NCBI GenBank assembly: GCA_033442325.1
Contig: JAWQFM010000034.1
Span: 677,444 to 694,523, forward strand
DNA: 17,080 nt
DNA from: Salpingoeca rosetta
Lineage: Eukaryota > Protista > Choanoflagellata
Reading direction: 5' to 3'
Part shown: positions 1,468 to 17,080 of the stretch, piece after piece
Numbering within the stretch: position 1 is the stretch's first letter
Layout: each line of letters begins with the position of its first letter
The notes under the pieces: generated by a model
Database searches by the model: none
Told to the model about the DNA's origin: nothing
What the model saw: the letters and a program-made list of their open reading frames with translations, nothing else
Position numbers and translations under genes: made by a program

Positions 1468-2489
1468 GAGCAATCCAAGCCGTACAGACCGGGGCAGCCA
1501 GGCACCTCGCACAGGGAGCCCTTGTAACCGAGCTCAAACGTGCACTGGCACTTGCCGTTGACAATGCGGCCGTGGTTGGAGCACTCTGCGTCGCAGCCAC
1601 GACCTGCCCAGCCGGGCTCGCACACGCAGATGCCCGAGTTTGGGGGATCTTGGACGCCGTGGACGCACGGGTCGTTGCAGGCAGGGCCCATCCAGGGGCC
1701 ACGGCAGTCCTGGCACAACGGTGTTGGCAGCGTGTAGTTGCAGAACCCGCGACCAAAGCAGTTTGGTGAGCCGGGGCAGTCTGGCGTCTCACAGCCGGGT
1801 CCCGTCCAGCCGGGCTCACAGTCGCACCTCGCTTCAGCGGCGTTGCACTCGCCGTTGCCAGAGCACGACTGGCCAATGCGCATGCGCTCCACGCCCGCTC
1901 AGGCCACACACGCCGTCTGCCGTCTCGCCTCCGATGCAGGGCCCATTGCCCGGGCAACCGCGGATGTCACAGCGCTCGCCCCAGTAGCCGGAGAGGTAGT
2001 CGCATACGCAGGTCTTGGTGGCGGAATCAATGGTGCCGTGGCCGTTGCATTCGAGGTTGCAGCTCTCGCCTGTCCAGCCAGGGTCGCACACGCAGATGCC
2101 CGAGTTGGGAGGGTCTTGAACGCCGTGGACGCAGGGCGTGTTGCAGTCCGGGCCCATCCAGCCCTGCTCGCAGTTTCTGGCACACGGGATTGGGCAGCGT
2201 GAAGTTGCAGTAGCCGCGACCAAAGCAGTCGGGCTCACCAGGGCAGTCTGGCGTCTCGCAGCCGGGGCCGCGCCAGCCAGGGGTTGCACTCACACACGGC
2301 GTCGGCGGTGTTACACTCGCCGTTGCCCGAGCAGGGACTTTGCCAACACGCATGCGCTCGGCGTCGCTCAAGCCGCACACGCCCTTCTGCCTCACTGCTG
2401 GGAGACAGGGGCCGTTGCCTGGGCAGCCAGGTACGTCACAAGGTCACCCCAAAACCCTTTTCTCGTAGGTGCAGATACAGAGCTTCAGG
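1468..2489 (-). CDS. Gene B, internal EGF-repeat segment (multiple frameshifts, probably sequencing errors)
   Basis: Correcting single-base indels near 2460, 2441, 2334-2341, 2280, 2175 and 1895 gives a continuous EGF array: CICTYEKGFWGDLCDVPGCPGNGPC...CSGNGECNTADAVCECNPGWRGPGCETPDCPGEPDCFGRG...CVHGVQDPPNSGICVC...GCPGLYGLDC. The segment is bounded by N gaps on both sides. Confidence 0.85.
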
Positions 2490-3045
2490 NNNNNNNNNNN
2501 NNNNNNNNNNNNNNNNNNNNNNNNNNNNNNNNNNNNNNNNNNNNNNNNNNNNNNNNNNNNNNNNNNNNNNNNNNNNNNNNNNNNNNNNNNNNNNNNNNNN
2601 NNNNNNNNNNNNNNNNNNNNNNNNNNNNNNNNNNNNNNNNNNNNNNNNNNNNNNNNNNNNNNNNNNNNNNNNNNNNNNNNNNNNNNNNNNNNNNNNNNNN
2701 NNNNNNNNNNNNNNNNNNNNNNNNNNNNNNNNNNNNNNNNNNNNNNNNNNNNNNNNNNNNNNNNNNNNNNNNNNNNNNNNNNNNNNNNNNNNNNNNNNNN
2801 NNNNNNNNNNNNNNNNNNNNNNNNNNNNNNNNNNNNNNNNNNNNNNNNNNNNNNNNNNNNNNNNNNNNNNNNNNNNNNNNNNNNNNNNNNNNNNNNNNNN
2901 NNNNNNNNNNNNNNNNNNNNNNNNNNNNNNNNNNNNNNNNNNNNNNNNNNNNNNNNNNNNNNNNNNNNNNNNNNNNNNNNNNNNNNNNNNNNNNNNNNNN
3001 NNNNNNNNNNNNNNNNNNNNNNNNNNNNNNNNNNNNNNNNNNNNN
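2490..3045. other. Assembly gap (556 N)
   Basis: Run of N. Confidence 0.99.
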
Positions 3046-3728
3046 CAAAACTGGCCACCATAGCACGGGTCACACACGCACTGGCCCAGCGGGCTGCACT
3101 CGCCGTGGCCGCTGCATGTCGAGTCACGATCGCACTGGTACTCGCAGCGGTAGCCGGACCAGCCGGCATTGCACACGCACTCGCCCGCAGCGTTGAGGGC
3201 GCCGTTGCTGGCCTCGCAAAAGTCTTGAAAGGAGCATGTCAGACCAGCCCAGCCTGCGTTGCATTGGCATTGGCCGGCAACAAGGCTACCGTGGCCGCTG
3301 CAGGCGGTATTCACGCATTGCGAGCCGTCGTCGCCGTCGTCATAGGTTGGGCTGCCAGCGACAGAATAGCCCTGTTGGATGTCAATGTTTGCTTCATGGA
3401 ACGCGGAGGTGAAGACTCGTCCACCGCCACCACCGCCGCCGTAAGTTGGTGTGCAAAGGTAGCAGCTGTGGTAGCCGCCATTACCGCCGCGAGCCTGTGT
3501 GTTGCCGTGGCCCTCGAGGTAGTCTGCTTCCAACCAGACGCTTCCACCAGCACCGCCACCGCTGCCGCTATGGCCGGAGCCTCCGTTTGAGGAGGCGCTT
3601 CCATCATACTCAAGGCGCGTGGAAGCAATGATTTGCACCGCACCGCCGCCCTCGCTGTATCCTGCCGCAGTGCCGATCACACTCAGGATCAGGCAGATGA
3701 GCAGGCAAGCAGCTCGGGCCGTGCACAT
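3046..3728 (-). CDS. Gene B, N-terminal part: signal peptide, half Gly-rich module and first tenascin-type EGF repeats
   Basis: ATG in GCCACCATG context, followed by MCTARAACLLICLILSVIGTAAG (hydrophobic core, A-x-G cleavage motif). Next come GGGAVQI...GSGGGAGGSVWLEA...GGGGGGGRV and EGF units (CSGHG...CxCxxGWxGxxC). The track ORF extension 3729-3950 is microsatellite-derived and probably 5' UTR. The CDS runs into an N gap. Confidence 0.85.
3660..3728 (-). other. Predicted N-terminal secretion signal peptide of gene B (23 aa)
   Basis: Basic n-region (R5), hydrophobic AACLLICLILSVI core, and small residues at -3/-1 (AAG|YSE). Confidence 0.75.
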
Positions 3729-3734
3729 GGTGGC
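3726..3734 (-). promoter_or_regulatory. Kozak-type translation initiation context GCCACCATG
   Basis: The plus strand reads catggtggc at 3726-3734. The ATG is in frame with the EGF ORF and directly precedes the signal peptide. Confidence 0.75.
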
Positions 3735-3795
3735 ACACGTCACTGTTGCTGCGTCCTCCTTTTCGTTTTGTCTGCTCGCGCGGTCAGCGCGCGCC

Positions 3796-3840
3796 CTCTC
3801 TTGTTTCTTTCTCTCTTTCTCTCTCTCTCTCTGTCTCTTT
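3796..3840. repeat. Imperfect (CT)n/pyrimidine microsatellite in the putative 5' UTR of gene B
   Basis: ctctcttgtttctttctctctttctctctctctctctgtctcttt; reads (AG)n on the sense strand. Confidence 0.85.
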
Positions 3841-3876
3841 GCTGGAGTGGTGTTGCTGTTGTGCGCTGGCACGCGT

Positions 3877-3892
3877 TGTGTGTGTGTGTGTG
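3877..3892. repeat. (TG)8 microsatellite
   Basis: Direct reading; (CA)n on the sense strand upstream of the gene B ATG. Confidence 0.9.
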
Positions 3893-5179
3893 TTTGCGTG
3901 CACTTCTGAGACGTGTTGTCAGCCAGCCAGCTTCTTCTCGCCAGCCGCACGCACGCTTAGACGCTTGTTGTGGTTTGGTGTGTGTGGTTGAATTGGTCTT
4001 TGCAGGCGGGCTGGTGGTCTTCAACTTCTTTGCAGCCAGCGACCCCCTCCGTTCGGGCGTCTTTGCGTGCGCAGTTCGTGCGAAACGTAGCCGCTGGTGT
4101 GCTATCCACCGCAAGTTGGAAGCGATGGCGCGGCAAGCAAGCAAGCAAAAGCAAAATTGTTGGGCGAAATTTTTCACGCAAGTTCGCACTGCCTGCCTGC
4201 AAGCAAACAATTCAACACGAAAACGGGGGGAGAACGCAGGCAGGGATGCCCTCAGCCTCTCACGTCATATGCAACCTTGCAACCCAATACGGCTCGCACA
4301 ACTGCAAAACGAAAGCCCTGAAAACTTAAGCTTCACCTGCTTCCGCTACTGCCTTGTGTTCCAAGGCTCGAGAGCGAGCCAGCGTGCATGCAAGCAAAAA
4401 ACAAGCAAGCAGCGAGCAGCAGCGATGTTTTGTGGCGGCTCAACAGACCTACAGACGTGGGTGTCAGGCCACCCCTTCTGTTTTGTTGCTGGTGCGCTTG
4501 TCTCTTTTGTTGTTTCTTCGCTTCTGGCACCGCCCTTCTGTCACGTGCCCAAACATGCTGCGGTGACACCTCTACACCACATCAACACTACGGTGCTATT
4601 GTTACCAATCCCCATTCCCTTCCCACCCATTCCTCATCTGTTCCTCTGTTCTGGCTGTGGTCGGTGTGTCAGTCAAATTAGAAGGACAGCAAAACAACAA
4701 GTGCATGCATGAAAGCAGCAAACGTGATGATGTAGGAGAACAAATGAGGCGTCAAAGCGCAAATGATGTCAACAGAGAAACGCGATGGAAGAGCTCGAGG
4801 GGGAGGGGGGCAGTAAAGAAGGAAGCACGAGACAAAAAACGACAAAGAAAAAGCAAACGCAACAATCCAGATGAAGATGATCACGCCCTTCGGTATGTAT
4901 GTGAGTTTCCCGAGCTCACCAAGTACCCAAGGCACAAGAAACACCTCAATCTGCTTCAACACTTGCAGAGAGCACACGCTCATTCCAAGTCAACAAACGA
5001 AATATGCGATGATGAAGGAACGTGACAATGAAAAGAAGGGACAAAACGAGTGAGAGACGCTCATGTGAATGACCACATGAGATTGCGCACGAGGGGATGT
5101 GCACAAAGAAAGAACAACAACACGGAGGATGACTGATTTCATGTAACAAGTCAACCAGAGAAAGGGTGTGAATGAAAGG

Positions 5180-5197
5180 GCAAGAGCAAGAGCAAGA
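5180..5197. repeat. (GCAAGA)3 short tandem repeat
   Basis: gcaagagcaagagcaaga read directly from the sequence. Confidence 0.8.
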
Positions 5198-5221
5198 ACA
5201 ACATGATCAACAAAAGAAGCA

Positions 5222-5224
<3 letters not shown>

Positions 5225-5282
<58 letters not shown>
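5225..5282. repeat. (AC)29 microsatellite
   Basis: Perfect dinucleotide run beginning 3 nt downstream of the gene A stop codon, reading (GT)n on the sense strand. Confidence 0.97.
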
Positions 5283-5285
<3 letters not shown>

Positions 5286-8200
5286 TTAGTTTGACCCTGC
5301 ACCACCGCCTGCGTGGTAAGGGTAACATGCGTGGCCATAAGGATCACCAGCCTCGACACCGCAATACGAATTGCCGTGCTTTCCGCGTCCACCGCGCCCG
5401 CCATATGAACCAGCGACGCTGTCACGACAACTGCTGCCACTTGGTGTTGTTGGACCGGTCCTGATAGTGTACCCACGGGCGTTTGTGGACAGGCTCGCTC
5501 GCTGGTCAACCTTGGCCTGACGTGTCCAGATGGCAATCGTGGACGCCGTCACGGAGGAAGAATACTGCATGTGCAGCCTGTCTGCATGCAGGACAGTGAT
5601 GTCCTTCACGCGCTCGAGCGACTTGGTGTTGCCGTTGCTGTTCGTGTCAACAATCGAAGCGCCCTTGTACAGAACCAGGTCCTTGAACATGTAGTTGTTG
5701 TCCATCCAGCTCCGCTCCGCGGCCGAGCACGTGCCTTCCAAGCACGTCGTGCGCCCGCCGTTGATGTTCATGCGGGTGCCAGGCAGCAGGTAGAGCGACT
5801 GCACGCCAGAGAGCATGCCATGCACGTTGAACGTGTCTCGCACGAAGAACCGCAGCGTGCCCTCCAGCTGGCCGTCAGTATCAACTGTCATGTCCACGGC
5901 TGGGTACGACGCCTCAAGCTCGCGCCCGCCAATGTGCACCTCGCGGCCAGACTGCACATACAAGAGCCCAGTCAGGTCACCAGTCACAGACTTGAAGAAC
6001 GCCGGGGCAGAGGGCGTCGTCTTGGTGCTGAACTGCAAGCGCGCATTGTTCACCATGTGCAGGTGGTCAAAGGTCACCTGGCCTTCATCCAGCACGAACG
6101 GATACGTGTTGCGGTTGCGCCCGCGGTTGTCCAGAATGAGCGTGTGGAACGCGTCACCATCGTCAGGGTGCGAGCGCACATACACGGACCCAACACCGCC
6201 GTGCTCCGTGTCAGTGTGGCAGCCGCCGTTGTCAGTCGACGCGCCGCCGCACCGTCCACCAAACGCCGTCACAGCACCATCCCATCTGAACTCGTGCGCC
6301 GTGATGTGCACCACCACGCGGCCACCAGAGCCTCCACCGGAGTATGCGCCTCCGTTGCCGCCGTTGGCCTGGATCACGCCGTGGCCAGTCAGCCGCTCCG
6401 TATTGACGTAGATGCCACCACCAGAACCGCCGCCGCTGTAGCTGCCGCCGTTGCCGCCGTTGGAGGAAATCATCCCGTCCACTTGCAGTCGTCCGCCAAC
6501 CAGGAGGTTGATCAGGCCGCCACCAGCGCCTGCGTTGGGCCCGCCGCCGCCCGATCCAGGCATGCGGCCCGAGTTCATAAACACAGAGCCGTACACGGAA
6601 CCAAGGCTGGAGCAGTAGTCACCGCGACCGCCAACGTTGGCATACGCACCACCGCAGCCGCGGTCACCGGTGTCGGAGCTGGCACCCGGGCCCGTGTTGG
6701 CGCCGTAGCCGCTGCCATCAGCAACCAGGCGGCCCGTGTGCTCAAAGAACGACTCGCCAATGTTCAGCGTGAGCACCTGCGTGTTGCTGCGCACGAGGCC
6801 GCCAAATCGGATGTCAAAGTCGGCCACCTCCACATCCGCGTTGGGCACTTTGATGTTGAGCGTCGCCGTGTTCTTGACCTCTACGGTAGAGAACTTCATG
6901 CTGTGCGGGTCCTGCAGGCTGCGGTACGCGTCTTCGGGGTAGAATGACTTGGACGTCTCCACCACCTCGTACTCAATGCCGTGAATCACCACTGTGTCGT
7001 TGGATTTCTCCAGGGTCAACAGGGCTGTGTGGCACTGGCCGTCACACACAAACTCGCCGCCGCTCTCAACGTAGAGGTGCTCCACATTGGTCAGGCGCCC
7101 TTCAAGGATCAGGTCCTCACCGCGCAAGATGAGGTTGGGCGGCATGAGCAGCTCCGCGTCCTCATCCACGTAGTACGTCACGGGCGCATCGTGCACGTTC
7201 TCTGCAGCCACCACCACTTCCACAAAGAAGCGCTGGTTCGACCGCACGCGAATGATGCCAGTGCGATCACCGCGCACCTCGTGGCCCACAATCGTCACAT
7301 GCTCTTGATCATCGGGGTGGTAGAAGTACAACTTGGCATACCCGTCCACAGTCATCTCGTCAAAGTCGATAAAGTCGCCAGTCGTGTCCATGATGAGCGC
7401 CGGCTGAGGCACCACGTTGTTCTCTTGGTCAATGCGCACGTGTCGGTGTGGCGAAACAGGGGCGATCTTCTTCAGCTCGGGGTTGTACTTGAAGAGCGCG
7501 TACTGTGGACCGCGGTTGATCTCGTAAGCGTACACCGTACCGGGCCCGCCCTGTGGCAGGCCACCGACGGAGCGCAACGCACCACCAAAGGTGTGGCGGT
7601 GGCGGATGTGCACAGCAATGCGTCCGCCTGAGCCGCCAAAGCCGGAGCCATGGCCTGCGCCACCGTTCACGTTGACTTCGCCTTGGCCCGTGAAGTTGGT
7701 CGTCTCGATGAAGATGCTGCCACCGCTGCCACCGCCGCCGTTCGAAACAACGCCTTCTGCACCGTTGGCAATCAACACGCCGTCCATCTCGGCCTGCGAG
7801 CCGGCGTTCAGGTGAACAACGCCGCCACCCGAGCCGCGCATGCACGGCACGCTGATGATGGCCGCGGCGTTGTTCGAGTAGCAGACAGTCTCCGTCGGGG
7901 TGGCGCCAGATGCGATCCCACCGCCGCTACCGTGCAGCAGAGGCTCGTACACCGTGCCATACGGGGTGTGGGCTGTGTTGTCGATGTTGTGGCCACCGCC
8001 GTACCCACCATACGAAGCACCGAGGCCACGCCCGTTGGAGCCGTCGTAAAAGCCAGAGCCCGGGCCGGTCTGCGCAGCAAAGCCACGCCCACCAGCGGCC
8101 AGGGCACCGCCATACTCGATGGAGAAGAGGGTGGTGTCGATCTTGCCCTCGTTCATCATCATCAAGCCACCGTAGCGAATGAAGATGTCGGTTGCAGAGA

Positions 8201-11200
8201 TGGTGAGATTGTGCTCGATGCGGCTAAACTCCACCTCAGAGTTGCGCTTGATCATGATGATGGGGATGGAGAAGTTGCCTGGCGTTGTGACGTCCACGTA
8301 CTCCTCGTTCTCCAGCTGCGCCGTGTTGGCCGAGGACGAGAACTCCACGTAAGCGCCGTCGCCCACATGCAGCTGCTCAATGCCCGTGAGCATGCCCTCA
8401 AACACGGAGCGCACGCCGAGCAAGTATACCTCCACGGGGAACACAATCTCGCCGCCAACGTCCACCTTGAAGCTGCAGGGCGCCTCTGTCTTGTTGCTGA
8501 GCGATTCCACATACTCCACAAACACAATCTGCTGGTCCTGCACGTGCAATTGGCCCGTGCGGTCACCAATGAACTTGTGGATGGTCACATTGACCTGCGT
8601 GCCAGGGTGGTAGGCAATGAGGCGTGAGTGGCCCGTGAGCTCCACCTCGTCAAACTCATACGTGTCCGTGCCTTCCTCGCTGATGACCGATGCCCACGGC
8701 ACGTTGACGCCAATGTTGTCCACATGCAGGTACGTGTGGTCAGCTGTCAGCACCGTCTCCTTGAGCGAGTACGAGTAGCGCACGATGCGGTACTCCAGCG
8801 GCCGCAGGTTCTCCTCCACATAGGTCGTGCCCGCTGCGGCTCCGCGCATGTTGACGGGCCCGCCGCGCTGCGGATGCTTGAACGTGTTGGACACAAGCAC
8901 CTGGTAGCACCAGAGCTTGGCGGTGTTGTCGGAGACGCAGAGCTCCTCGCCGTTGAACACCATGCTGCGGATGGTGACCGCCGTGGAGAAGGAGAAGCCG
9001 TCATACTGGCCCGTGGCCAGGTCGTGGCGCGTGATGAGCGTGCCAGAGCCGTAGAAGATCTTGTCGTGCACAATGGCAAAGCCGCCGTACAGGTCAGCGT
9101 TGTTGTAGGTGGAGCGGCCGCCCTCCAGTGCAAACGTGCGCAGCATGGCACCGTCAATCACGTCGTATACGTAGATGACTTCGCTGCGGCTGCGCATCAC
9201 AAACACCTCACGGCCAGACACGGCCACGCCAGAGGCGTACTGCCCAAACTCTTCGTACTGCATGTCGACCTCCCAAATGAGGTCGTTGTCGGGATAGGGC
9301 CCGTACTTGCCAATCTTGTTGCCCGTGTGGTCTGCCGTGTAGTAGTAGTTGTCGTCGTCAAACCACAGCTGCATGACGTTGTCTGTGCCCAGCTCAACCG
9401 TACCACGGAGCTCAAACGTGTCAGCGTCCACGCGCCACGCAAACGGCTCCGGCCACTTGGGGAACCAGTACTCGTTCAGATGCATGTTGAAGCCGGTACC
9501 GTAGCTGCGTGGGTCAAGCGTGCGCTGCGTCAGCGCGGCCGACGTGGTGAACGCCGGGTGCTCGTCAATGCCACCGTAGTCGAGGTACGCGCCGCCAAAG
9601 CGGTAGCGGAGCTCGCACAGCACGGCCGCACGGCCACCAGCACCACCAAAGCCGTCAACGCCGCCGGCGCCGCCATGCACGTCAATCGTGCCGTGCCCAG
9701 ACATGTTGTACGTGCGGATCTGCACGCTGCCACCGGCCCCGCCGCCAGACCGCAAGCCTTGGCCGTTGCCGCCGCGCGCAGACAGGCGGCCGTTCAGCTC
9801 CAGGTGGGACTCCACCTCCCAAACGAGGAAGCCGCCACCAGAGCCGCCGGTGCCGAGGCCGTTGCCGCCGCCAGAGCCCCAGTCATCGGGCGCGTACACG
9901 CTGTCGCACGCCTGCGTGGCATGCTCCGCGTGGAGCCCGCCACCCTGGCCTCCGTGGGCGGCGCCAGAGCCGTACCCGTCGACCGTGCTGCCTCTGCAGG
10001 GCCCAGTCTCGGCCGGGTGGCCGGTCGCGTCAAGGTGCAACACACCTTCGCTCTCGATATTGCCTGTGGCACTGAGGATGGTCGCCTCGTTGGCGAACAT
10101 GTTGCCATTGAACTGCACATGCAAATGCGCAACCGTGAGCGTGAACGCGTGGCTCTTGATGCGCTGCAGCTCCAGCGTGCCGCCGTACTTGATGGTCAGC
10201 GTGCCAAACGTAATGTTGCCAGGCTGTGTCATGTAGATGCGTGTCAGGTTGCCGATCAGCGACGCCGTTTGCGACGATGAGGCAAACTGCAGCGTTGCCC
10301 CATCCTCAATGTACATGTCCTCCACGTTGGTGATGAGGCCTTCAAAGACGCTGCGCACGCCGTGCAGGTGCGTCTCGGAGGGGAAGATGATTTCCGAGCC
10401 GGCGTCACCGCGGAACGAGCACGGCGCCTCCGTATGGTTCGTCGTGCTCTCCACGTACTCCACCAGAATGAGTTGGTCGTTGCGGACGTGGAACTGGCCA
10501 GTCTTGTCGCCAATGAAGCGGTGCACCACCACGGTCACAGGCTCGCCCTGCGGATGGTACGCCAGCATGCGCGAGTATCCAGTCAACTCAAGCTCATCAA
10601 ACTCGTAATATGTCGTGTTGTCCTCCAGAATGACGGTAGCGCCGGGCACGTTAAAGCCTTCGTTGTCCACGTGTGCATAGAGGCGGTTCACCTCCTCGTA
10701 CTCTTCACCAGTCACAGGGTCATACTTGAGCTTCTTGTACGACGGCGGCGCACGGTTCTCAGCCACGAAGATGGTGCCTGCCGCTGCGCCAAAGGGGTTC
10801 AGGGTGTAGTTCAGGTGCCTGGAGATGCGCTCGGGGTGCACGTCGTCGTAGACGTTCTCGTCAAACACGGCGTAGCAGCGGATGTCGCGTGAGTCGCCGT
10901 TGCTGTGCACACACATGTCCTGGCCGTCAAAGTTGAGGCCGTCCACGTTGGAGCCGACGGTGAAGGAGTAGTCGTCGTAGCTGCCGTCCTTCAGGTTGAA
11001 GCGGTACACCTGCGAGCCGCTGGCGTAGAACAGCTTCTCCTGCCCAACGGCAAGACCGCCGTGGAGGTTGTTCCAAGACAGCCCGGGCACGTTGTCGAGT
11101 GCAAACGTGCGCGCCGTCTCACCATTGTCCTTGTACAGCTCATACACAGTGTTGCTGCCGCGGCGCATGGCGTACACATAGTACTCATCAGAGGCGACCG

Positions 11201-14200
11201 CGGCCGTGCTGGGGCCAAGACGCACCTCCCACACCACCTGCGGCTCGTGTGGTGGCTCAAAGTACTTGCGCTCCGGAAGTGGCGCAAACTTGGTCACCGT
11301 GCTGTCCAGCTGCGAGTTGATGTCGCTCACAGCATACCATGAACCGTCAAAGTCGGTCCAGATCTGTGCAATGTGTGTCTTGGAGCCAGCGCTCACCACG
11401 CCGCGGTACTCAAAGTCGCGGTCGTACGTGTAGATGAGGGAGCCCGGCCAGTGCGGGAACCAGTACATGTCGGTCTCGTGGTTGTAGCCGCCACCATACG
11501 AGTGTGCACGGTCGATGCGCACCGTCTGCGTTCGGACAGGGTCCTCTGTGAGCGGTTCGGGTTCAAGGCGGTTGCCGCCGCGATCACGCAGGCGACCGCC
11601 AAACTTGTACCGCCACTCGCAGTGGACGGCAACACGGCCACCAGCGCCGTCGTAGCCGCGCTTTGTGCCGTGGCCGCCGTTCACAGCAAGCTCGCCGTGG
11701 CCCGTAAAGTTTGTGGTTTGGATGAGGATGCTGCCACCAGAGCCGCCGCCCGAGTTCTCGCCAGTTCCATTGCCACCGCGGCACGACAGCGTGCCGTCGA
11801 CCTCAATGGACACGGCAGAGTCCCAGAACAGCTGGCCGCCGCCGCGGCCGCCGGGAGACACGAGACGTCCGCCCTTGCCGTGGCCGCCGCCGGAGCCGAG
11901 CTGCGTGGGCCTGTACATTGAACCGTGCGGCTCACCACCCTTTGGTGACAAGTGGATGGGCACGCCGTTGTCCATGAACGTGTGGTTGCCACCGCCCTCA
12001 CCACCGTGACCGCCGCCGCTGCCAATGTCGTTGACAGTGACACCGGGAGACGGGCCCATGTACACCTCAAGCCCGCCGGGCCCGCGCGCGTCCAGCGACA
12101 GCCGGCCAGTGGCCTCAATGTACGCCGTGGATGAGAAGATGTCGGCGTGATTCATGAGCACCGTGCCGCCGTACTTGATGGTCAGGTCGGCGACGTTGAG
12201 GTTCAGCTCAGTCGTGACACGAAGGAACTCAATCTCCGATGCACGGCGAACCGTGACCGTACCAAACGTGAAGTTACCCGGGCTTGTGACCAGCGAGTAC
12301 GTGCCATTCTCCAGGAACGCCGTGTTGGCTGTGGACGAAAACTGTGACACAGAGCCGTAGAACAGATACAGGTCAATCACGCCTGTCAGCTGGCCCTCAA
12401 ACACGCTTCGCGTTCCGCGCAGGTACACGGTCGACGGCAGGATGATCTCAGCCCCCTCGTCGATCCAGTAGCTGGCTGGCGCAGTGCTCTCGCCGGGTTC
12501 GTTCGCAACATAGTCAACATAGAGCTGCTGGTCTGAACGCAGGTGCAGCCGGCCAGTATTGTCGCCAACAAACTCATGCACAACGGCTGTGATGTTCTCC
12601 AAGTGAGAGGGATGGAAGAGCTCAAGGTTCGCGTGTCGCGTCAGCTCCAACTCATCAAACTCAAACACCGTCGAGTTGCCTTCGATCATGAGCGAGTACC
12701 ACGGGACGAGGTGGTCTTCGGCATCAAACTTGACATAGATGAAGCCAGGCTCAATCGCAATCACGTCACCTTCCTTGCTGTACTTGATGTCGGCGTATTG
12801 CGGGCCGCGGTTCGTCTCCTCGCGGTACACGGAGCCAGCGGTGCCGTACGTGTCGCCTTCACCGGGCGCAGCACGGTAGTGGCCGCCAAACTTGTGCGCA
12901 AAGTGGCAGTGGATGCCGATGCGCCCACCGCTACCGCCACCACCAAGCTCAACACCACGACCACCGCTCACGTCAATCGTGCCGTGCCCGGTCATGTTGA
13001 GTGTCTCCGCGAAGAAGGAGCCGCCAGAGCCGCCACCGGCGTTCTTGCCCTGGCCGTCCTGGCCAAACAGGTGGATAAAGCCGTCCACGTGCAGCTGCAG
13101 TTCGGAGCGCCAAACAAGGAAACCGCCACCGCTGCCACCGCGCGATCCAGCCGCACCGGCGCCACCGCCAGAGCCAAGCTCAATGGGCTGCACCACGGAG
13201 CCGTATGCCAGGCCGCCAGAGCCAACGCCCTCAATGTACTTGCCGCGCAGGCCAGGGAAACCCGGAACAGACTCGTAGCGCGGCTTCACCACGTGGAAGC
13301 CACCGCCCTGGCCGCCGTAGCCAGCGCCGGCGCCGCGGGGCCGGCCGCGCTCGTCCGTGTGGTTCATGCCCGCACCGGGGCCCGTCATCTCGGGGTGGCC
13401 GGTGTAGTTGAGGTTGAGGATGCCGCCACCCTCCACCACACCGTAAGAGGTCTCAATGTAGCCGCGGTTCATGAGCACGAGCGACTGGTACTTGATGAGC
13501 AAGGACGACGCCTGCAAGGTGAGCGGGTCTGGGATGTTGTCCAGGTCGAGCACGCAGCCCCGCTGCATGGTCATGGTGCCAAACGTCAGGTTCCCTGGTG
13601 TGGTCATCCACAGGTACGTCTTGTTGAGTGGCGACCCCTCGAGCATGGCTGTGCGAGACGTGTTTGTGAACACGACGAGCGCGCCCTCCGCTGCGCGGAA
13701 GTCCTCAATGTTGGTCACAAGGCCCTCTGCCAGTGTGCGCGTGCCCAGGAAGGTGTTGCGCGTTGGGAAGATGACCTCGGCCGTGGGGTCGATGCGATAG
13801 CTGACGGGCGCAATGGACTCCGTCGCCACGCCCTCAACAACCTCGACAAACATCTGCTGCATGCCACGCACGTGCACGCGGCCAGTGCGGTCGCCAACGA
13901 ACTTGTGGGAGATGATGGTTGACGTGAGGTTGTGGAAGAGCACGGTGACGTGGTGGAAGAGATGCAGCTCGTCAAACTCAAAGTAGCCGTTCTCCTCGTC
14001 CGTGACGGCCGTGGCCAGGTGGTGGTTGCGGTTGTCGTTGTCCAGGATGAGCGCAACGTGCGCGTCCTTGAAGCCGACAATCTGGTCGTCGCGCACAATG
14101 GGCTCGCGCTGGTCCAGGCCATCGTTCGAGTCCGTGTAGTACACAGTGCCGCCAGCACCGGCCTCGCCAGGGAAGTTGCCTGATGCATTGGAGGGGGCGC

Positions 14201-15101
14201 CGCCAAAGCCGCCAAATGCCTCGTAGATGCCGGCAAACTCACGCAACCAGCGCACGTGCACGCCGATACGGCCGCCCGCGCCACCGCCGCCGCGGTCCAT
14301 GCCGCTGCCGCCAGTCGCGTTGATGACACCATGCCCAGCAAACGTCGTGGTCTCAATCCAGATGCTGCCACCAGAGCCGCCGCCAGAGTTGGGGGCAGAC
14401 GCGTCAGCGCCCATGCTCTCCAGGCTTCCGTCCAAGTGCAATGAGAGGCCGACAAGCACGCGCATGATGCTGCCGCCAACGCCACCGCCAACGCCACCAC
14501 CGGGGCTGCCGGGGTGGCGCGGGGTCTTGTACGAGCCGTACGCCTGTCCGCCCTTGATGGGGTCCTCCTCAGAACCGAAGATGACGTGCGAGCCGCCGTA
14601 GCCACCATGACCGCCGCCCTGGCCAAACAACACGCCATCGGCAGTGATGTTGTCGCCGGCACCGAGCATCTCGGCCTTGAATGGCGCGTCAGGCAGCAGC
14701 AGATCCCCAAGCGTTGGGCCACGGGCCGTCGTGGTCAGAACAGAGTCGCCCTCCATGAACGCCTCGTTGACGCGCAGGAACATGCTGGGAGCGCGGATAG
14801 AGGAGTCCGCGCGCATAACCAGCTCGCCCACGTCAAGGTCGAGTGGTAGCGGATACTCCACCTCCGCCTCGTACTCCAGCTCCAGCTTGCCGAGGTCAAG
14901 CACGCCCGGCGTGGGGGTCGTGACAACCTGCTCACCCTGGACGAGGGCGTTGCTTGCCACGGGCCCAACGACCGCGCGGCGACCCTCCATCAAGCGCAGA
15001 GATGTCACGCCCGTGATGAGGCCGCGCCAGTCGAGCGCAACCGCACGTGTGCCGTGCATCTCGGCGTAGTTGGCGAGCCGCAGCTCTGCCTCCTCGTCAA
15101 T
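5286..15101 (-). CDS. Gene A, main segment: giant Gly-rich/beta-repeat extracellular protein (at least ~3,930 aa together with the upstream segment)
   Basis: Uninterrupted 9.8-kb ORF. The frame is open upstream of ATG 15059 (IDEEAELRLANYAEM, matching the repeat consensus IDEGAEIILP). It shows strong C/G third-position bias, iterated GGGSGGSIxIxT...GHGxI...GGxGGRIAVH and EFDExEL...FxGDxTG motifs, many N-x-S/T sequons, and no obvious TM helix. It ends at TAA 5288-5286. Confidence 0.95.
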   Translation of the reverse strand: MDEEAELRLANYAEMHGTRAVALDWRGLITGVTSLRLMEGRRAVVGPVASNALVQGEQVVTTPTPGVLDLGKLELEYEAEVEYPLPLDLDVGELVMRADSSIRAPSMFLRVNEAFMEGDSVLTTTARGPTLGDLLLPDAPFKAEMLGAGDNITADGVLFGQGGGHGGYGGSHVIFGSEEDPIKGGQAYGSYKTPRHPGSPGGGVGGGVGGSIMRVLVGLSLHLDGSLESMGADASAPNSGGGSGGSIWIETTTFAGHGVINATGGSGMDRGGGGAGGRIGVHVRWLREFAGIYEAFGGFGGAPSNASGNFPGEAGAGGTVYYTDSNDGLDQREPIVRDDQIVGFKDAHVALILDNDNRNHHLATAVTDEENGYFEFDELHLFHHVTVLFHNLTSTIISHKFVGDRTGRVHVRGMQQMFVEVVEGVATESIAPVSYRIDPTAEVIFPTRNTFLGTRTLAEGLVTNIEDFRAAEGALVVFTNTSRTAMLEGSPLNKTYLWMTTPGNLTFGTMTMQRGCVLDLDNIPDPLTLQASSLLIKYQSLVLMNRGYIETSYGVVEGGGILNLNYTGHPEMTGPGAGMNHTDERGRPRGAGAGYGGQGGGFHVVKPRYESVPGFPGLRGKYIEGVGSGGLAYGSVVQPIELGSGGGAGAAGSRGGSGGGFLVWRSELQLHVDGFIHLFGQDGQGKNAGGGSGGSFFAETLNMTGHGTIDVSGGRGVELGGGGSGGRIGIHCHFAHKFGGHYRAAPGEGDTYGTAGSVYREETNRGPQYADIKYSKEGDVIAIEPGFIYVKFDAEDHLVPWYSLMIEGNSTVFEFDELELTRHANLELFHPSHLENITAVVHEFVGDNTGRLHLRSDQQLYVDYVANEPGESTAPASYWIDEGAEIILPSTVYLRGTRSVFEGQLTGVIDLYLFYGSVSQFSSTANTAFLENGTYSLVTSPGNFTFGTVTVRRASEIEFLRVTTELNLNVADLTIKYGGTVLMNHADIFSSTAYIEATGRLSLDARGPGGLEVYMGPSPGVTVNDIGSGGGHGGEGGGNHTFMDNGVPIHLSPKGGEPHGSMYRPTQLGSGGGHGKGGRLVSPGGRGGGQLFWDSAVSIEVDGTLSCRGGNGTGENSGGGSGGSILIQTTNFTGHGELAVNGGHGTKRGYDGAGGRVAVHCEWRYKFGGRLRDRGGNRLEPEPLTEDPVRTQTVRIDRAHSYGGGYNHETDMYWFPHWPGSLIYTYDRDFEYRGVVSAGSKTHIAQIWTDFDGSWYAVSDINSQLDSTVTKFAPLPERKYFEPPHEPQVVWEVRLGPSTAAVASDEYYVYAMRRGSNTVYELYKDNGETARTFALDNVPGLSWNNLHGGLAVGQEKLFYASGSQVYRFNLKDGSYDDYSFTVGSNVDGLNFDGQDMCVHSNGDSRDIRCYAVFDENVYDDVHPERISRHLNYTLNPFGAAAGTIFVAENRAPPSYKKLKYDPVTGEEYEEVNRLYAHVDNEGFNVPGATVILEDNTTYYEFDELELTGYSRMLAYHPQGEPVTVVVHRFIGDKTGQFHVRNDQLILVEYVESTTNHTEAPCSFRGDAGSEIIFPSETHLHGVRSVFEGLITNVEDMYIEDGATLQFASSSQTASLIGNLTRIYMTQPGNITFGTLTIKYGGTLELQRIKSHAFTLTVAHLHVQFNGNMFANEATILSATGNIESEGVLHLDATGHPAETGPCRGSTVDGYGSGAAHGGQGGGLHAEHATQACDSVYAPDDWGSGGGNGLGTGGSGGGFLVWEVESHLELNGRLSARGGNGQGLRSGGGAGGSVQIRTYNMSGHGTIDVHGGAGGVDGFGGAGGRAAVLCELRYRFGGAYLDYGGIDEHPAFTTSAALTQRTLDPRSYGTGFNMHLNEYWFPKWPEPFAWRVDADTFELRGTVELGTDNVMQLWFDDDNYYYTADHTGNKIGKYGPYPDNDLIWEVDMQYEEFGQYASGVAVSGREVFVMRSRSEVIYVYDVIDGAMLRTFALEGGRSTYNNADLYGGFAIVHDKIFYGSGTLITRHDLATGQYDGFSFSTAVTIRSMVFNGEELCVSDNTAKLWCYQVLVSNTFKHPQRGGPVNMRGAAAGTTYVEENLRPLEYRIVRYSYSLKETVLTADHTYLHVDNIGVNVPWASVISEEGTDTYEFDEVELTGHSRLIAYHPGTQVNVTIHKFIGDRTGQLHVQDQQIVFVEYVESLSNKTEAPCSFKVDVGGEIVFPVEVYLLGVRSVFEGMLTGIEQLHVGDGAYVEFSSSANTAQLENEEYVDVTTPGNFSIPIIMIKRNSEVEFSRIEHNLTISATDIFIRYGGLMMMNEGKIDTTLFSIEYGGALAAGGRGFAAQTGPGSGFYDGSNGRGLGASYGGYGGGHNIDNTAHTPYGTVYEPLLHGSGGGIASGATPTETVCYSNNAAAIISVPCMRGSGGGVVHLNAGSQAEMDGVLIANGAEGVVSNGGGGSGGSIFIETTNFTGQGEVNVNGGAGHGSGFGGSGGRIAVHIRHRHTFGGALRSVGGLPQGGPGTVYAYEINRGPQYALFKYNPELKKIAPVSPHRHVRIDQENNVVPQPALIMDTTGDFIDFDEMTVDGYAKLYFYHPDDQEHVTIVGHEVRGDRTGIIRVRSNQRFFVEVVVAAENVHDAPVTYYVDEDAELLMPPNLILRGEDLILEGRLTNVEHLYVESGGEFVCDGQCHTALLTLEKSNDTVVIHGIEYEVVETSKSFYPEDAYRSLQDPHSMKFSTVEVKNTATLNIKVPNADVEVADFDIRFGGLVRSNTQVLTLNIGESFFEHTGRLVADGSGYGANTGPGASSDTGDRGCGGAYANVGGRGDYCSSLGSVYGSVFMNSGRMPGSGGGGPNAGAGGGLINLLVGGRLQVDGMISSNGGNGGSYSGGGSGGGIYVNTERLTGHGVIQANGGNGGAYSGGGSGGRVVVHITAHEFRWDGAVTAFGGRCGGASTDNGGCHTDTEHGGVGSVYVRSHPDDGDAFHTLILDNRGRNRNTYPFVLDEGQVTFDHLHMVNNARLQFSTKTTPSAPAFFKSVTGDLTGLLYVQSGREVHIGGRELEASYPAVDMTVDTDGQLEGTLRFFVRDTFNVHGMLSGVQSLYLLPGTRMNINGGRTTCLEGTCSAAERSWMDNNYMFKDLVLYKGASIVDTNSNGNTKSLERVKDITVLHADRLHMQYSSSVTASTIAIWTRQAKVDQRASLSTNARGYTIRTGPTTPSGSSCRDSVAGSYGGRGGRGKHGNSYCGVEAGDPYGHACYPYHAGGGAGSN
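8898..9525 (-). other. Putative five-bladed beta-propeller domain, copy 3
   Basis: YGTGF...EYWFPKW; VMQLWFD..YYYTADH; ASGVAVS..EVFVM; YGGFAI..DKIFY; SMVFNGEELCVS...LWCY. Confidence 0.65.
10865..11520 (-). other. Putative five-bladed beta-propeller domain, copy 2
   Basis: YGGGY...MYWFPHW; IAQIWTD; AAVASD.YYVYAM; HGGLAV..EKLFY; GLNFDGQDMCVH...IRCY. Confidence 0.65.
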
Positions 15102-17080
15102 AGGAAGCCGGACACAAACGGGCGCGCGTGGCGGTTTGTGCCGGGCTCGTAGTCAACAAAGTACGTCTCGTTGGCTCGCGCGTGGATGAAGGCGCTGCCG
15201 TCGCTCACAAGGCTGCGGATGGACAGGGTCGGCGCAGTGCCACCAGCCTCGTGTGCGGGCGCGACCTCCACCTGTGCCTCGTCAAGCATGCGCAGCTCGT
15301 CAAAGGCATACGACGCATTGTTCAGCTCCGTGCGCTGGTGCCGCACCACCCTGGGGTTGCGCTCGCGGAACAAAAACGGCTTGGGCGGCATTGCGTTCTG
15401 GCCATCAAGGTACAGGCGCGTGCGGTATTCAGGCAGCACGGCCAGGTCAAGCGGGTCTGTGAGCAGGTCCTCGTACATGACGGTACCAGATCCACCAACA
15501 TCACCGCCCGTGCGGTTGCTGTAGTGGTACATCTCCTCAGTCGGAATCACAACGCCGTTGCTTTCCGCCTCGGTGTTGAAAACATCAGAGTGGAGCACGC
15601 GGTAGCAGTACAGTGGTGCGGACGAGCTTGTGTCGCGGCTGACACACAGGTCGCGGCCGTTGAACGCGAGGGAGACCTGCGACACCGCCGTTGTGAACGA
15701 CACGCCGCTGTACTCGCCCGTCTCCAGACTGTACCGATACACCTTGTTTGACGCTGCGCGATACACCTCCCCCGCAACCACCACCAGGCCGCCATATGTC
15801 GTGGAGCCAAAGTTGTTGGCCCCGGAGAGGGTCAGGGGCGGCTTCTCCGCGCCAGAGGGCTCGTAGAAGCGCACTGTGCTGCCGTCCGCCTTGGAAAGGC
15901 GGTGCACAATGGCTGATGTTGGCGTGATGACGTAGACGTAGTCTGCGTCCACAGACACGCCAGCAGCAGTATCAGAGACGCTAACAGACCACTGGCGATA
16001 CGTGCTCGGCCATGGGCCCCACTTGGACACGGTGTGGTCTTGCCAGTCGGCGGTGTAGTAGTACCTGTCCACATCACCCCACATCTGCATGATGTAGCGC
16101 TGTGGCAAGGTGAAGGCGCCAAGGTAGGCGCCATCCTCTGCCTGGTACCGGCGCACTGTCGTCGTTGATGACGTCCAGTCCGGGAACCAGTACTCGTCAT
16201 CGGGAGGATAGTAGCCAGCGCCATACCTGCCAACACTGAAGGACGTCGAGCTTGCGCCGAGGTACGATGGGTTGGGCACGTGCTGTGGGTTCATCTTGAC
16301 GCCACCTGCACCAGCCGGGGTCTCACCGCGCCACTCGTTGAAGAGGCGCGTGTGTACGGCAATGCGGCCGCCAGCACCGCTGCCGCCATCGCTGGGGCCA
16401 GCGCTGACTGGTGTGGTGTGGCAGGGTGAGCCCAGCGAGCATGTGCCACCGTGTCCACCCTGTGCAGAAACAGTACCGTAGCCTCTGAGGTGCCCGACCT
16501 TGATCCAGGCTGCGCCGCCAGAGCCGCCGCCGGAGCCCGTCTCCTCCGCACCAGCGGCGCCGTCAACGATGATGGTGCCTTCAAGGTCAAGCACCTGCGC
16601 GACCACCACATGCGCATGGCCACCGCCGCGGCCACCGGGCACAAGCTCCCCGTTCACCAGGCGAGCACCGCCGCGAGAGCCAGCTTGCGTGGGCTCAAAC
16701 GTGCTGCCAAACGCAGGGCCGCCAGGAAGGCTGCCGTGTGCAAATGCGCCGTGGCCGCCTTGTGTGGCGTAGCCCGCACCTGCGCCCGTTGTGTGGCCTG
16801 TTGGTGTGCCAGGACCGTCAATGTCAGGGCCACGGCCAGTCATGTCAAACACCACATCGGGGTCTGTGATGACAGTGGTGGCCTCGAGATCCATAAACTC
16901 GCAGGAGACGTACACGTTCCACTTTGCATCCAGCTCGTCCACCTCAAGGTCGAGACCCAAGGGTGGCTGGAGCGTCGTCTTCGACTCAGCACCAAGCTCA
17001 AGTGTAGCGAAGGCAAACGTGCCAATTGGTTTTGTGTGAAGAGTGGGGGTTGTTGACGTCTCTGACTTGACATAGAGGGC
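15102..17080 (-). CDS. Gene A, upstream segment (5'-partial): giant Gly-rich/beta-repeat extracellular protein; contains Gly-rich module 1 and propeller 1
   Basis: The frame of track ORF 15005..16960 stays open to the window edge (manual translation from 17080: ALYVKSETSTTPTLHTKPIGTFAFATLELGAESKTTLQPPLGLDLE...), so the TTG at 16960 is not the start. It carries the same repeat motifs as the downstream 3257-aa ORF (GGGSGGAAWIK, GAGGRIAVH, YAFDELR). It joins that ORF through a 1-nt frameshift between 15102 and 15152. Confidence 0.9.
15590..16240 (-). other. Putative five-bladed beta-propeller domain, copy 1
   Basis: YGAGY...EYWFPDW; IMQMWGD..YYYTADW; AAGVSVD..YVYV; YGGLVV..GEVY; SLAFNGRDLCVS...LYCY. 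The homology among the three copies is direct; the fold is inferred. Confidence 0.65.

What the first reader, a model, noticed from the sequence alone, without database searches (positions are those of the whole stretch)
3400..5494. One glycine-rich module split between two neighbouring genes: candidate two-chain, self-complementing surface protein system
Seen: each complete module in gene A reads LxxxGxG..GP..GxxxGGxGG..YG..P..GSGGG / loop / GGGx(hydrophobic)..LxxDG..GG..GGGSGGSIxI..GHGxI..GG..GGRxxV. Gene A stops right after the first half (LSTNARGY..GP..AGSYGGRGG..PYG..PYHAGGGAGSN-stop). Gene B's mature chain begins with exactly the second half (YSEGGGAVQIIASTRLEYDG..SNGG..GSGGGAGGSVWLEA..GHG..ARGGNGG..GGGGGGGRV), behind its own Kozak ATG and signal peptide. 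Inference: a gene fission inside a domain (or a pre-fusion state), with the two secreted chains rebuilding the module in trans and docking the ~4,000+-aa filament onto an EGF stalk. I know of no description of such complementation for this repeat family, but I cannot run a search to confirm novelty.
Basis: partly seen in the sequence, partly recalled or inferred. Interest (0 to 1): 0.85.

Follow-up and report, generated by a model that had tools for sequence, protein, structure and literature searches.

The report
Giant surface-protein gene split mid-module
In the choanoflagellate Salpingoeca rosetta, a giant secreted fibre protein that is one gene in relatives, including an acorn worm, has been cut into two neighbouring genes inside one structural repeat; whether the two chains rejoin is untested.

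Summary
Both genes are on the minus strand. Against a profile of seven intact modules, gene A ends on positions 2-66 of 160 and mature gene B starts on positions 75-149, so the two are complementary halves.

- **Organism and models:** this is Salpingoeca rosetta (GL832990.1). The public models already show two genes, A of 3257 aa and B of 9217 aa starting at ATG 3728.
- **RNA:** the data favour two mRNAs. A's message runs about 625 nt past its stop and ends near 4660 in two independent runs. A contig of B runs unspliced through both candidate acceptors and the ATG. No splice joint was seen, and A and B differ in depth. Coverage is low, so a rare spliced form is not excluded.
- **Relatives (new here):** the same terminal module is unbroken and followed by the EGF array in at least 15 fused terminal modules from relatives. 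These include Ptychodera flava XP_070533134.1 and an intronless metagenomic ORF colinear with both A and B. The split is therefore a derived gene fission, not a pre-fusion state.
- **Structure:** AlphaFold predicts a beta-solenoid. The cut lies in a variable loop, between a glycine-rich excursion and three rungs.
- **Open point:** rejoining of the two chains in trans is plausible but untested.
- **Side finding:** A's annotated start is a frameshift artefact.

The parts
5289..15059 (-). Gene A as annotated (3257 aa). It alternates beta-helix stretches, six complete glycine-rich modules and propeller-like cassettes. Its ATG at 15059 is an internal Met.
15005..16960 (-). Upstream ORF in another frame. 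It carries a seventh complete module (M0) and a cassette, and joins A through a 1-nt frameshift near 15100-15115.
5289..5501 (-). Orphan first half of the terminal module (A residues 3187-3257, HMM positions 2-66).
   Evidence: The two read variants in codons 3249 and 3251 are synonymous.
5286..5288 (-). TAA stop of A. It falls in the loop column where fused orthologues continue.
   Evidence: The X9 contig is colinear down to 5295 and runs 37 nt further, but that part was masked as repeat and not aligned.
4660..5285 (-). 3'UTR of A, beginning with a (TG)n microsatellite at about 5224-5282. The transcript ends near 4660-4662.
   Evidence: contigs from two runs of different studies both end at 4660/4662, at depths of 17.5 and 20. 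Raw RNA reads in X21 and X22 lie here on the same strand as A.
3756..4659 (-). Intergenic stretch holding B's promoter and leader. It contains (CA)n and (GA)n tracts and has almost no RNA cover.
   Evidence: depth 0 in X21, X22 and X9, apart from 0.2 in X22 at the 4559-4684 edge bin, and 0-2 in X4. Word shares of about 0.6 in X4-X7 fit this part being absent.
3729..3755 (-). Confirmed part of B's 5'UTR, with a Kozak-like context. There is no ATG upstream in the leader.
   Evidence: X4 record 2.
3660..3728 (-). B codons 1-23, a signal-peptide-like N-terminus. This stretch is absent from the fused orthologues.
3408..3656 (-). Second half of the terminal module (B residues 25-107, HMM positions 75-149). 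It is predicted to form three beta-solenoid rungs.
3046..3323 (-). First teneurin/tenascin-type EGF repeats of B. The array continues through the N gaps to the start of the window.
   Evidence: PF23106 scores 35 bits against a cut-off of 24.3, and PF07974 scores 34.9 against 22.1. Also.

Best explanation
This is a lineage-specific gene fission. The ancestor had one giant secreted protein: a long beta-solenoid fibre of glycine-rich modules, ending in a special terminal module that leads straight into an EGF array.

In S. rosetta a 1,557-bp spacer now sits in a variable surface loop of that terminal module.
- The upstream gene (A) ends with the module's first half, a roughly 68-residue glycine-rich excursion. 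It then has a stop codon and its own 3'UTR of about 625 nt.
- The downstream gene (B) has its own leader, ATG and signal peptide. It begins with the module's last three solenoid rungs, followed by the EGF array.

Shown here: the complementary halves, the fused state in relatives, and RNA that fits two messages.

Inferred: that both products are secreted separately, and that the cut is tolerated because it lies in a loop between structural sub-units. Whether the chains meet again outside or inside the cell is open.
For: - **Complementary halves.** HMM coordinates are 2-66 for A's end and 75-149 for B's start.
- **Gene models.** The locus is S. rosetta GL832990.1. Genes are called as A (3257 aa) and B (9217 aa, starting at ATG 3728).
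- **RNA.**
  - X9 covers A at depth 15 and 4660-5166 at depth 20, but has nothing on 3047-4659.
  - Contigs of X4 and X9 both stop at 4660/4662.
  - The X9 contig is colinear from 6800 down to 5295, so it passes candidate donor 5302 unspliced. Candidate donor 5295 sits at the edge of the repeat-masked tract, into which the contig runs 37 nt further.
  - The X4 contig passes both candidate acceptors and the ATG, up to 3755.
  - No joints were reported in two raw RNA runs whose depth at A's end is 5-9.
  - B's depth there is only 0.2-2.4.
- **Fused orthologues.**
  - P0211 is an intronless 4-kb ORF in JGI metagenome 3300037348. It is colinear with A residues 2206-3209 (45% identity) and runs straight on into B residues 11-227 (42% identity).
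  - P0122 is a Tara metagenome DNA contig. It is 61% identical over the part that aligns to B and is continuous across the boundary.
  - L002 and L004 also span the boundary.
  - P0133 is Ptychodera flava XP_070533134.1, with internal units, a complete terminal module and an EGF array.
  - At least 12 further clusters match module plus EGF in one stretch.
- **Break point.** An alignment of 15 fused terminal modules puts A's end and B's mature start in the same variable loop.
- **Structure.** AlphaFold on an intact module gives pLDDT 91.5 and a beta-solenoid. The first half is a coil-rich insert between rungs and the second half is three rungs. B's rungs predicted alone keep block-mean pLDDT of 84-96.
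- **Constraint.** Of the variants seen in RNA reads over A, 11 are synonymous and 6 are not, and the last two before the stop are both synonymous.
Against: - RNA depth is low: 75 and 66 reads. Joints are listed only from 3 reads upward, so a minor spliced form could be hidden.
- The raw reads do not cover B's first 180 nt or so. B's start therefore rests on one contig of a run whose RNA nature is only a guess.
- That contig diverges from the reference upstream of 3755, so B's transcription start is unknown.
- The stop codon itself lies in a stretch that the read tool masked as repeat.
- No poly(A) tails or cap data were seen.
- All runs carry the same species label, so the split could be private to this isolate.
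Confidence: 0.72

Rival explanations
1. One reading: the two secreted chains re-associate. A's glycine-rich half and B's three rungs would rebuild one module by rung stacking, anchoring the A fibre on B's EGF stalk.
For: - The halves are exactly complementary.
- Both halves stay about as conserved against fused relatives as intact modules are against each other.
- The two variants in A's orphan half are synonymous.
- The fold is a beta-solenoid, and mature B begins directly with a rung and has no N-terminal cap.
- The genes remain adjacent and co-oriented.
- From general knowledge: uncapped solenoid ends tend to stack.
Against: - No test of association was possible.
- A and B differ 3-6 fold in RNA depth, and X9 shows A without B.
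- AlphaFold folds B's rungs confidently without the first half.
- The cut lies in a loop between sub-units, so neither part need depend on the other.
Confidence: 0.25
2. It is still one gene. The spacer would be a 1.64-kb intron, with in-frame pairs 5303|3661 or 5296|3681. The A-only message would arise by polyadenylation inside the intron and the B-only message from an internal promoter, while some full-length A-B protein is still made.
For:
- Either product would give a loop of normal length compared with fused orthologues.
- The region coding B's signal peptide is pyrimidine-rich, as an acceptor tract would be.
- Low read depth cannot exclude rare joints.
Against: - No joint appears in any of the four runs.
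- Contigs run unspliced past donor 5302 and both acceptors. Donor 5295 lies at the edge of the repeat-masked tract.
- The supposed intron part 4660-5285 is covered as deeply as the exon, while 3756-4659 is empty.
- B's depth is well below A's.
- Both donors are poor matches to GTRAGT.
Confidence: 0.12
3. It is a disruptive insertion on the way to decay. The spacer broke the gene in this isolate's lineage, A is simply truncated, and B is expressed from a fortuitous promoter with no selected function for the arrangement.
For: - The closest sampled relative (61% identity over the part that aligns to B) is still fused, so the event is fairly young.
- All sequencing runs carry the same species label.
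- The region has microsatellites, and there are frameshifts nearby in the assembly.
Against: - Both parts are transcribed.
- B begins with a well-formed Kozak ATG and signal peptide exactly at the module boundary.
- Variants in A are mostly synonymous.
- B keeps an open frame of 9217 aa in the public model.
Confidence: 0.1
4. It is an assembly artefact: the spacer was wrongly placed in a scaffold full of gaps.
For: There are N gaps at 881-1467 and 2491-3045, and two apparent frameshifts close by.
Against: - Runs X1-X3 hold 0.93-0.96 of the sampled words of 3100-6000.
- RNA contigs join A's coding end to the TG tract, and the TG tract to 4660-5166.
Confidence: 0.03

Closest known systems
Gene fission of a multidomain gene, defined by a single-gene orthologue in outgroups and two adjacent co-oriented genes in one lineage
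   Same: Fused orthologues exist in an animal and in choanoflagellate-like contigs. In S. rosetta there are two adjacent co-oriented genes. The downstream part has gained a start codon and the upstream part a stop and a 3'UTR.
   Different: The cut lies inside a structural repeat module and not between domains. The downstream half also had to gain a secretory signal peptide. Both products are giant extracellular proteins.
Unnamed 150-160-aa glycine-rich beta-solenoid module of giant proteins in Holozoa and in Verrucomicrobiota/Planctomycetota
   Same: A's seven complete modules, and the two halves, match the same profile. 492 long homologues were found, and their modules are nearly all complete.
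   Different: Here one module is shared out over two genes. No Pfam, NCBIfam or PDB sequence match exists for the module.
Right-handed beta-helix of two-partner-secretion adhesins (EtpA, HMW1, filamentous haemagglutinin)
   Same: These are the best structural matches to the predicted module: Z 9.2-9.6, about 117-141 residues aligned, rmsd 2.5-2.8. They are fibre-like adhesin solenoids.
   Different: The similarity is of fold class only, at 14-22% identity and with Z near the level that the tool's note calls common. The glycine-rich turns and the 68-residue excursion are not features of those proteins, and this protein is eukaryotic.
Two-chain extracellular modules made by cleavage (SEA, GAIN, Notch heterodimerisation domain)
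   Different: Those modules are cut after folding of a single chain. Here the two chains would be translated separately and would have to find each other. There is no sequence or fold relation.
ALK/LTK glycine-rich domain followed by an EGF-like module
   Same: A glycine-rich region with a GHG-like motif sits next to EGF. This was recalled as a lead.
   Different: Tested and not met. Pfam finds no match for the modules even at E up to 10, and the module profile finds no PDB chain at E up to 1. ALK is not among the top structural matches.

Membership tests
Gene fission event | Orthologues in outgroups encode both parts in one ORF | tested here: met
   P0211 is colinear with A 2206-3209 and B 11-227 in one intronless ORF. 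P. flava XP_070533134.1 has internal units, a whole terminal module and EGF. L002, L003 and L004 also span the boundary.
Gene fission event | The two parts are separate transcription units | tested here: inconclusive
   There is a 3' end at about 4660 in two runs, a B contig that runs through the ATG, no joints, and unequal depth. But depth is low, there are no cap or poly(A) data, and the RNA nature of X4 and X9 is a guess.
Gene fission event | Both parts keep open, constrained reading frames | tested here: met
   A's frame is open for 3257 codons and B is called at 9217 aa. Variants over A are 11 synonymous and 6 non-synonymous. This evidence is weak because the counts are small.
Glycine-rich beta-solenoid module family (unnamed) | Match to the whole 160-position module profile | tested here: not met
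   A's end covers positions 2-66 only and B's start covers 75-149 only. A's seven other modules cover 1-160.
Glycine-rich beta-solenoid module family (unnamed) | Predicted beta-solenoid fold with glycine-rich turns | tested here: met
   The intact module gives pLDDT 91.5 and pTM 0.90. B's half alone gives block-mean pLDDT of 84-96 over the rungs. The best structural matches are beta-helix adhesins.
Teneurin/tenascin-type EGF array (B) | Pfam EGF models above the curated cut-off | tested here: met
   PF23106 scores 35.0 against 24.3 and PF07974 scores 34.9 against 22.1. PF25024 scores 49, below its cut-off of 65, on the 227-aa piece.
ALK/LTK glycine-rich domain (Pfam Gly_rich) | Sequence match to the family profile or to solved ALK/LTK chains | tested here: not met
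   No Pfam family at E up to 10 for any of the 7 modules. No PDB chain at E up to 1.
   There is no multimer prediction and model coordinates are not returned. This needs AF-Multimer or co-IP.
Secreted protein (B) | Cleavable N-terminal signal peptide | tested here: inconclusive
   The n-region, h-region and c-region are visible, and hydropathy peaks at 3.4. No SignalP was available.

The most novel reading that the evidence does not exclude
A natural split beta-solenoid. After a recent gene fission, two giant secreted proteins of a close unicellular relative of animals would re-form one glycine-rich module from separately translated halves. This would couple an A fibre of probably more than 8,000 aa, headed by a JmjC oxygenase if the upstream models join as the frameshift analysis suggests, to a 9,217-aa EGF/VWD-type matrix protein.
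Probability: 0.2. Interest if true: 0.75.

Novelty: new member of a known kind. Interest (0 to 1): 0.5.

Why it matters
Gene fissions that cut inside a folded unit of an extracellular protein, and that force the downstream half to gain a new signal peptide, are rarely documented with both the derived and the ancestral state available.

Here the fused form is available in an animal (Ptychodera flava) and in two choanoflagellate-like contigs. The split form is in a genetically tractable model organism. That makes it possible to test how a giant matrix protein tolerates being cut, and whether solenoid halves re-associate.

It also corrects the public gene models. A's start, and the stop of the upstream 4280-aa JmjC-headed gene, are frameshift artefacts. 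So the 'filament' is probably one protein of more than 8,000 aa.

My paper searches found no description of this fission, but they were narrow.

Tried and rejected
- **ALK/LTK glycine-rich domain.** No Pfam or PDB sequence match.
- **Naming the module.** Neither Pfam nor NCBIfam names it, not even in the bacterial homologues. The only hit was a weak AgmC_N match far below its cut-off.
- **Foldseek against PDB.** Nothing at E<=0.001. The wide VIA search gave only fold-class matches.
- **Protein Atlas on B's N-terminus.** Only unnamed clusters at scores near the chance level.
- **Recent partial duplication as the origin of B's half.** Rejected, because both halves are as diverged from the other modules as those are from each other.
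- **Remnants of coding sequence in the spacer.** No module hits in any frame.
- **Homology of B's signal peptide to the ancestral loop.** BLAST extends into it with only a few matches, which is not significant.
- **An inter-chain disulfide from an odd cysteine in A's half.** Cysteine positions are not conserved in a consistent pattern among the 15 fused modules, so I dropped the idea.
- **The 109 nt upstream of 3755 in the X4 contig.** Not found in the window or in L001.
- **Metagenome scan with A's last 250 aa.** No relatives found.
- **Short-protein search with B 1-227.** Only three hits, but these led to the fused loci.
- **Paper searches.** Nothing on this locus or on split solenoids.


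Full report
**1. What is in the sequence**

The window is eukaryotic, with about 60% G+C and scaffold gaps of N. The relevant genes are on the minus strand.

Gene A is the ORF 5286..15059. Its last residues read ...PYHAGGGAGSN and are followed by TAA at 5286-5288 and a (TG)n tract. A 1,557-bp spacer follows. An ATG at 3728, in a GCCACCATG context, then opens gene B. B has a 23-residue hydrophobic N-terminus, then YSEGGGAVQII..., then EGF repeats that run through two N gaps to the start of the window.

**2. Are the two ends halves of one module?**

I cut out the seven complete glycine-rich modules, six in A and one in the upstream ORF 15005..16960, and built a 160-position HMM.
- A's C-terminus matches positions 2-66 (E 1e-5).
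- B residues 25-107 match positions 75-149 (E 6e-16).
- The unmatched positions 67-74 are the variable loop.

The halves are 40-47% (A) and 40-56% (B) identical to the corresponding halves of the other modules. That is the same range as intact modules show among themselves. This is therefore an old member of the array and not a recent partial copy.

**3. Where it comes from and how it is annotated**

The exact 3257-aa product is on record on GL832990.1 of GCA_000188695.1, Salpingoeca rosetta. The genes called there are A (3257 aa), a downstream gene of 9217 aa starting exactly at ATG 3728, and an upstream gene of 4280 aa with JmjC and F5/8C hits. The two-gene model is therefore already public.

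The upstream gene carries the same modules. Its stop (L001 6714) and A's ATG both sit where the conserved repeat pattern simply continues in another frame. A is therefore very probably the C-terminal part of one protein of more than 8,000 aa headed by the JmjC domain.

**4. RNA evidence (runs chosen)**

- **X9.** Contigs cover A (5295-6800, depth 15) and 4660-5166 (depth 20), but nothing on 3047-4659.
- **X4 (another study).** There is a contig on 4662-5166 and a 777-nt contig colinear with 3088-3755. The second one runs through both candidate acceptors (3662, 3682) and the ATG.
- **Candidate donors.** The X9 contig is colinear from 6800 down to 5295, so it passes candidate donor 5302 unspliced. 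It runs a further 37 nt into the TG tract. Candidate donor 5295 sits at the edge of that tract, which the tool masked and did not align.
- **Raw reads.** Two stranded raw RNA runs (X21, X22) give depth 3-9 on A's end, reads inside 4685-5314 on the same strand, none on 3551-4558, and only 0.2-2.4 on B. No joints were reported.
- **Word shares.** Shares of about 0.6 in X4-X7 and about 0.4 in X9-X15 fit RNA that lacks the 3756-4659 stretch.

Together this fits an A message with a 3'UTR of about 625 nt ending near 4660, and a separate, more weakly expressed B message.

There are limits. Only 141 raw reads were laid. Joints need 3 reads to be listed. The raw reads do not reach B's first 180 nt. The RNA nature of X4 and X9 is a guess. 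The stop codon lies in a stretch masked as repeat. A rare spliced isoform through the in-frame pairs 5303|3661 or 5296|3681 is therefore not excluded.

**5. Relatives decide the polarity**

A search with B's first 227 aa gave three short hits, and these led to three loci.
- **L003.** A 690-nt Tara Oceans metagenome (DNA) contig, 61% identical over the part that aligns to B. It reads straight from the end of the first half into the second half.
- **L002.** A 175-kb ENA contig with an A-like giant exon upstream. One exon (9719-10843) holds the whole terminal module plus EGF repeats.
- **L004.** An exon spans the boundary, and the next exon holds the last rung plus EGF.

A phmmer search of 1.84 billion representatives with the L002 exon found at least 14 clusters that match module plus EGF in one stretch.
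- **P0133** is XP_070533134.1 of the acorn worm Ptychodera flava. It has three internal module hits, one of them partial, a complete terminal module (1132-1293) and an EGF array.
- **P0211** is a 1333-aa intronless ORF on a JGI metagenome contig. BLASTP aligns it colinearly to A residues 2206-3209 (45% identity) and then to B residues 11-227 (42% identity).

In a MAFFT alignment of 15 fused terminal modules, A stops and mature B starts in the same variable loop column. These terminal modules also share a cysteine-bearing insert in the last glycine turn, which supports orthology.

The fused state is therefore ancestral, and the S. rosetta arrangement is a derived fission. B's signal-peptide segment has no counterpart in the fused proteins.

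**6. Structure**

The module has no Pfam, NCBIfam or PDB sequence match, although 492 long homologues exist. They occur in animals (Mactra, Branchiostoma, Actinostola, Saccoglossus, Asterias) and in many proteins whose source names are mostly Verrucomicrobiota and Planctomycetota. Their modules are almost always complete.

AlphaFold2 on module 6 with flanks, using 145 aligned sequences, gave pLDDT 91.5 and pTM 0.90.
- Two regular rungs come first.
- A stretch of about 68 residues follows that is confident but nearly strand-free. This is the 'first half'.
- Three rungs with glycine-rich turns follow (the 'second half'), then further rungs.

The wide structural search puts it with the beta-helices of two-partner-secretion adhesins (EtpA, HMW1, FHA; Z 9.2-9.6). 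A polyproline-II-bundle antifreeze protein scores Z 7.1 on the glycine-rich part. This is fold class only. B residues 24-227 predicted alone keep block-mean pLDDT of 84-96 over the three rungs, while the EGF part is poorly predicted.

The cut therefore lies in a loop between an excursion that stays with A and a three-rung mini-solenoid that heads B. Model coordinates are not returned, so I could not measure contacts between the halves.

**7. Mechanism**

Best supported (0.72): a gene fission in a solenoid loop, giving two separately transcribed and separately secreted giants.

How the spacer arose is inference. It may have been an inserted segment, or an old intron that gained a poly(A) site, a promoter and an ATG. 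The pyrimidine-rich, Leu/Ile/Cys-coding signal-peptide region would fit a former acceptor tract, but I have no test for this.

It is physically reasonable, since mature B starts with an uncapped rung and both halves stay conserved. But it is untested, and the unequal RNA levels do not favour an obligate 1:1 complex (0.25).

Other readings are one gene with a rarely used intron (0.12), a young disruptive insertion without selected function (0.10) and an assembly artefact (0.03). Runs X1-X3 hold 0.93-0.96 of the stretch, which argues against the artefact reading.

**8. Constraint**

Seventeen sites in A differ from the reference in reads or contigs. Eleven are synonymous, including both in the last ten codons. 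This is a small sample and only a hint that the orphan half is still coding.

**9. Novelty and score**

Gene fission is a known kind of event and the two gene models are public. My two paper searches found nothing on this locus or on naturally split solenoids, but they were narrow.

What is new here:
- evidence that the two genes share one module;
- evidence that the fused form is ancestral, being present in an animal and in choanoflagellate-like contigs;
- the likely gene-model corrections.

I class it as a new member of a known kind, with interest 0.5. It would rise to about 0.75 if the chains prove to re-associate.

**10. Operators' rules**

Noticed in passing
window about 15100-15115 (frames overlap over 15005-15152): A's annotated ATG (15059) is an internal Met. 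The repeat pattern continues from the ORF 15005..16960 into A with a 1-nt frame change. This is either an assembly error or a real frameshift.
   Followed up: partly
L001 6660-6716 (outside the window, upstream of A): The stop of the upstream 4280-aa JmjC/F5-8C gene also follows a frame change inside a module tail. The conserved pattern continues in another frame up to an N gap (6803-7979). That gene, the 651-codon ORF and A are probably one protein of more than 8,000 aa.
   Followed up: partly
window 3756-3870, from the X4 contig: The B-mRNA contig matches up to 3755 and then carries 109 nt that are absent from the window and from L001. The break follows an AG. It could be a 5'UTR intron with an unassembled first exon, a strain indel in the GA/CA-rich leader, or a chimera.
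   Followed up: partly
window 8898-16240 (A) and P0211/L005 1-679: Propeller-like cassettes are inserted in some A units, and one is also present upstream of the fused metagenomic orthologue. They were not analysed further.
   Followed up: no
P0071 (Asterias rubens, 2886 aa) and P0002 (Mactra antiquata, 4975 aa): The starfish model ends exactly after a first half-module (HMM 4-69). The clam model starts exactly at a second half (HMM 78-152) with no signal peptide. These are probably truncated models at exon borders, but similar splits were not excluded.
   Followed up: no
proteins P0020-P0120: The same 150-aa module occurs 6-9 times per protein in hundreds of hits whose source names are mostly Verrucomicrobiota and Planctomycetota, next to caspase (Peptidase_C14), DUF7619, Big_5 or CarboxypepD_reg domains. 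No Pfam or NCBIfam model covers the module.
   Followed up: partly
window 5307-6539 and 3483, 3502: Raw RNA reads of 2026 (X21, X22) differ from the reference at many sites, for example 8 of 8 reads at 5613. The 2017 contig (X9) agrees with the reference at most of them. This points to strain or allele differences within the species label, or to reference errors.
   Followed up: partly
B residues 63-75 (window about 3504-3542) and the same place in L002, P0124, P0133, P0211: Terminal modules share a cysteine-bearing insert in the last glycine turn that internal modules lack, apart from a similar insert in module M0. It is a marker of the module that precedes the EGF array.
   Followed up: partly
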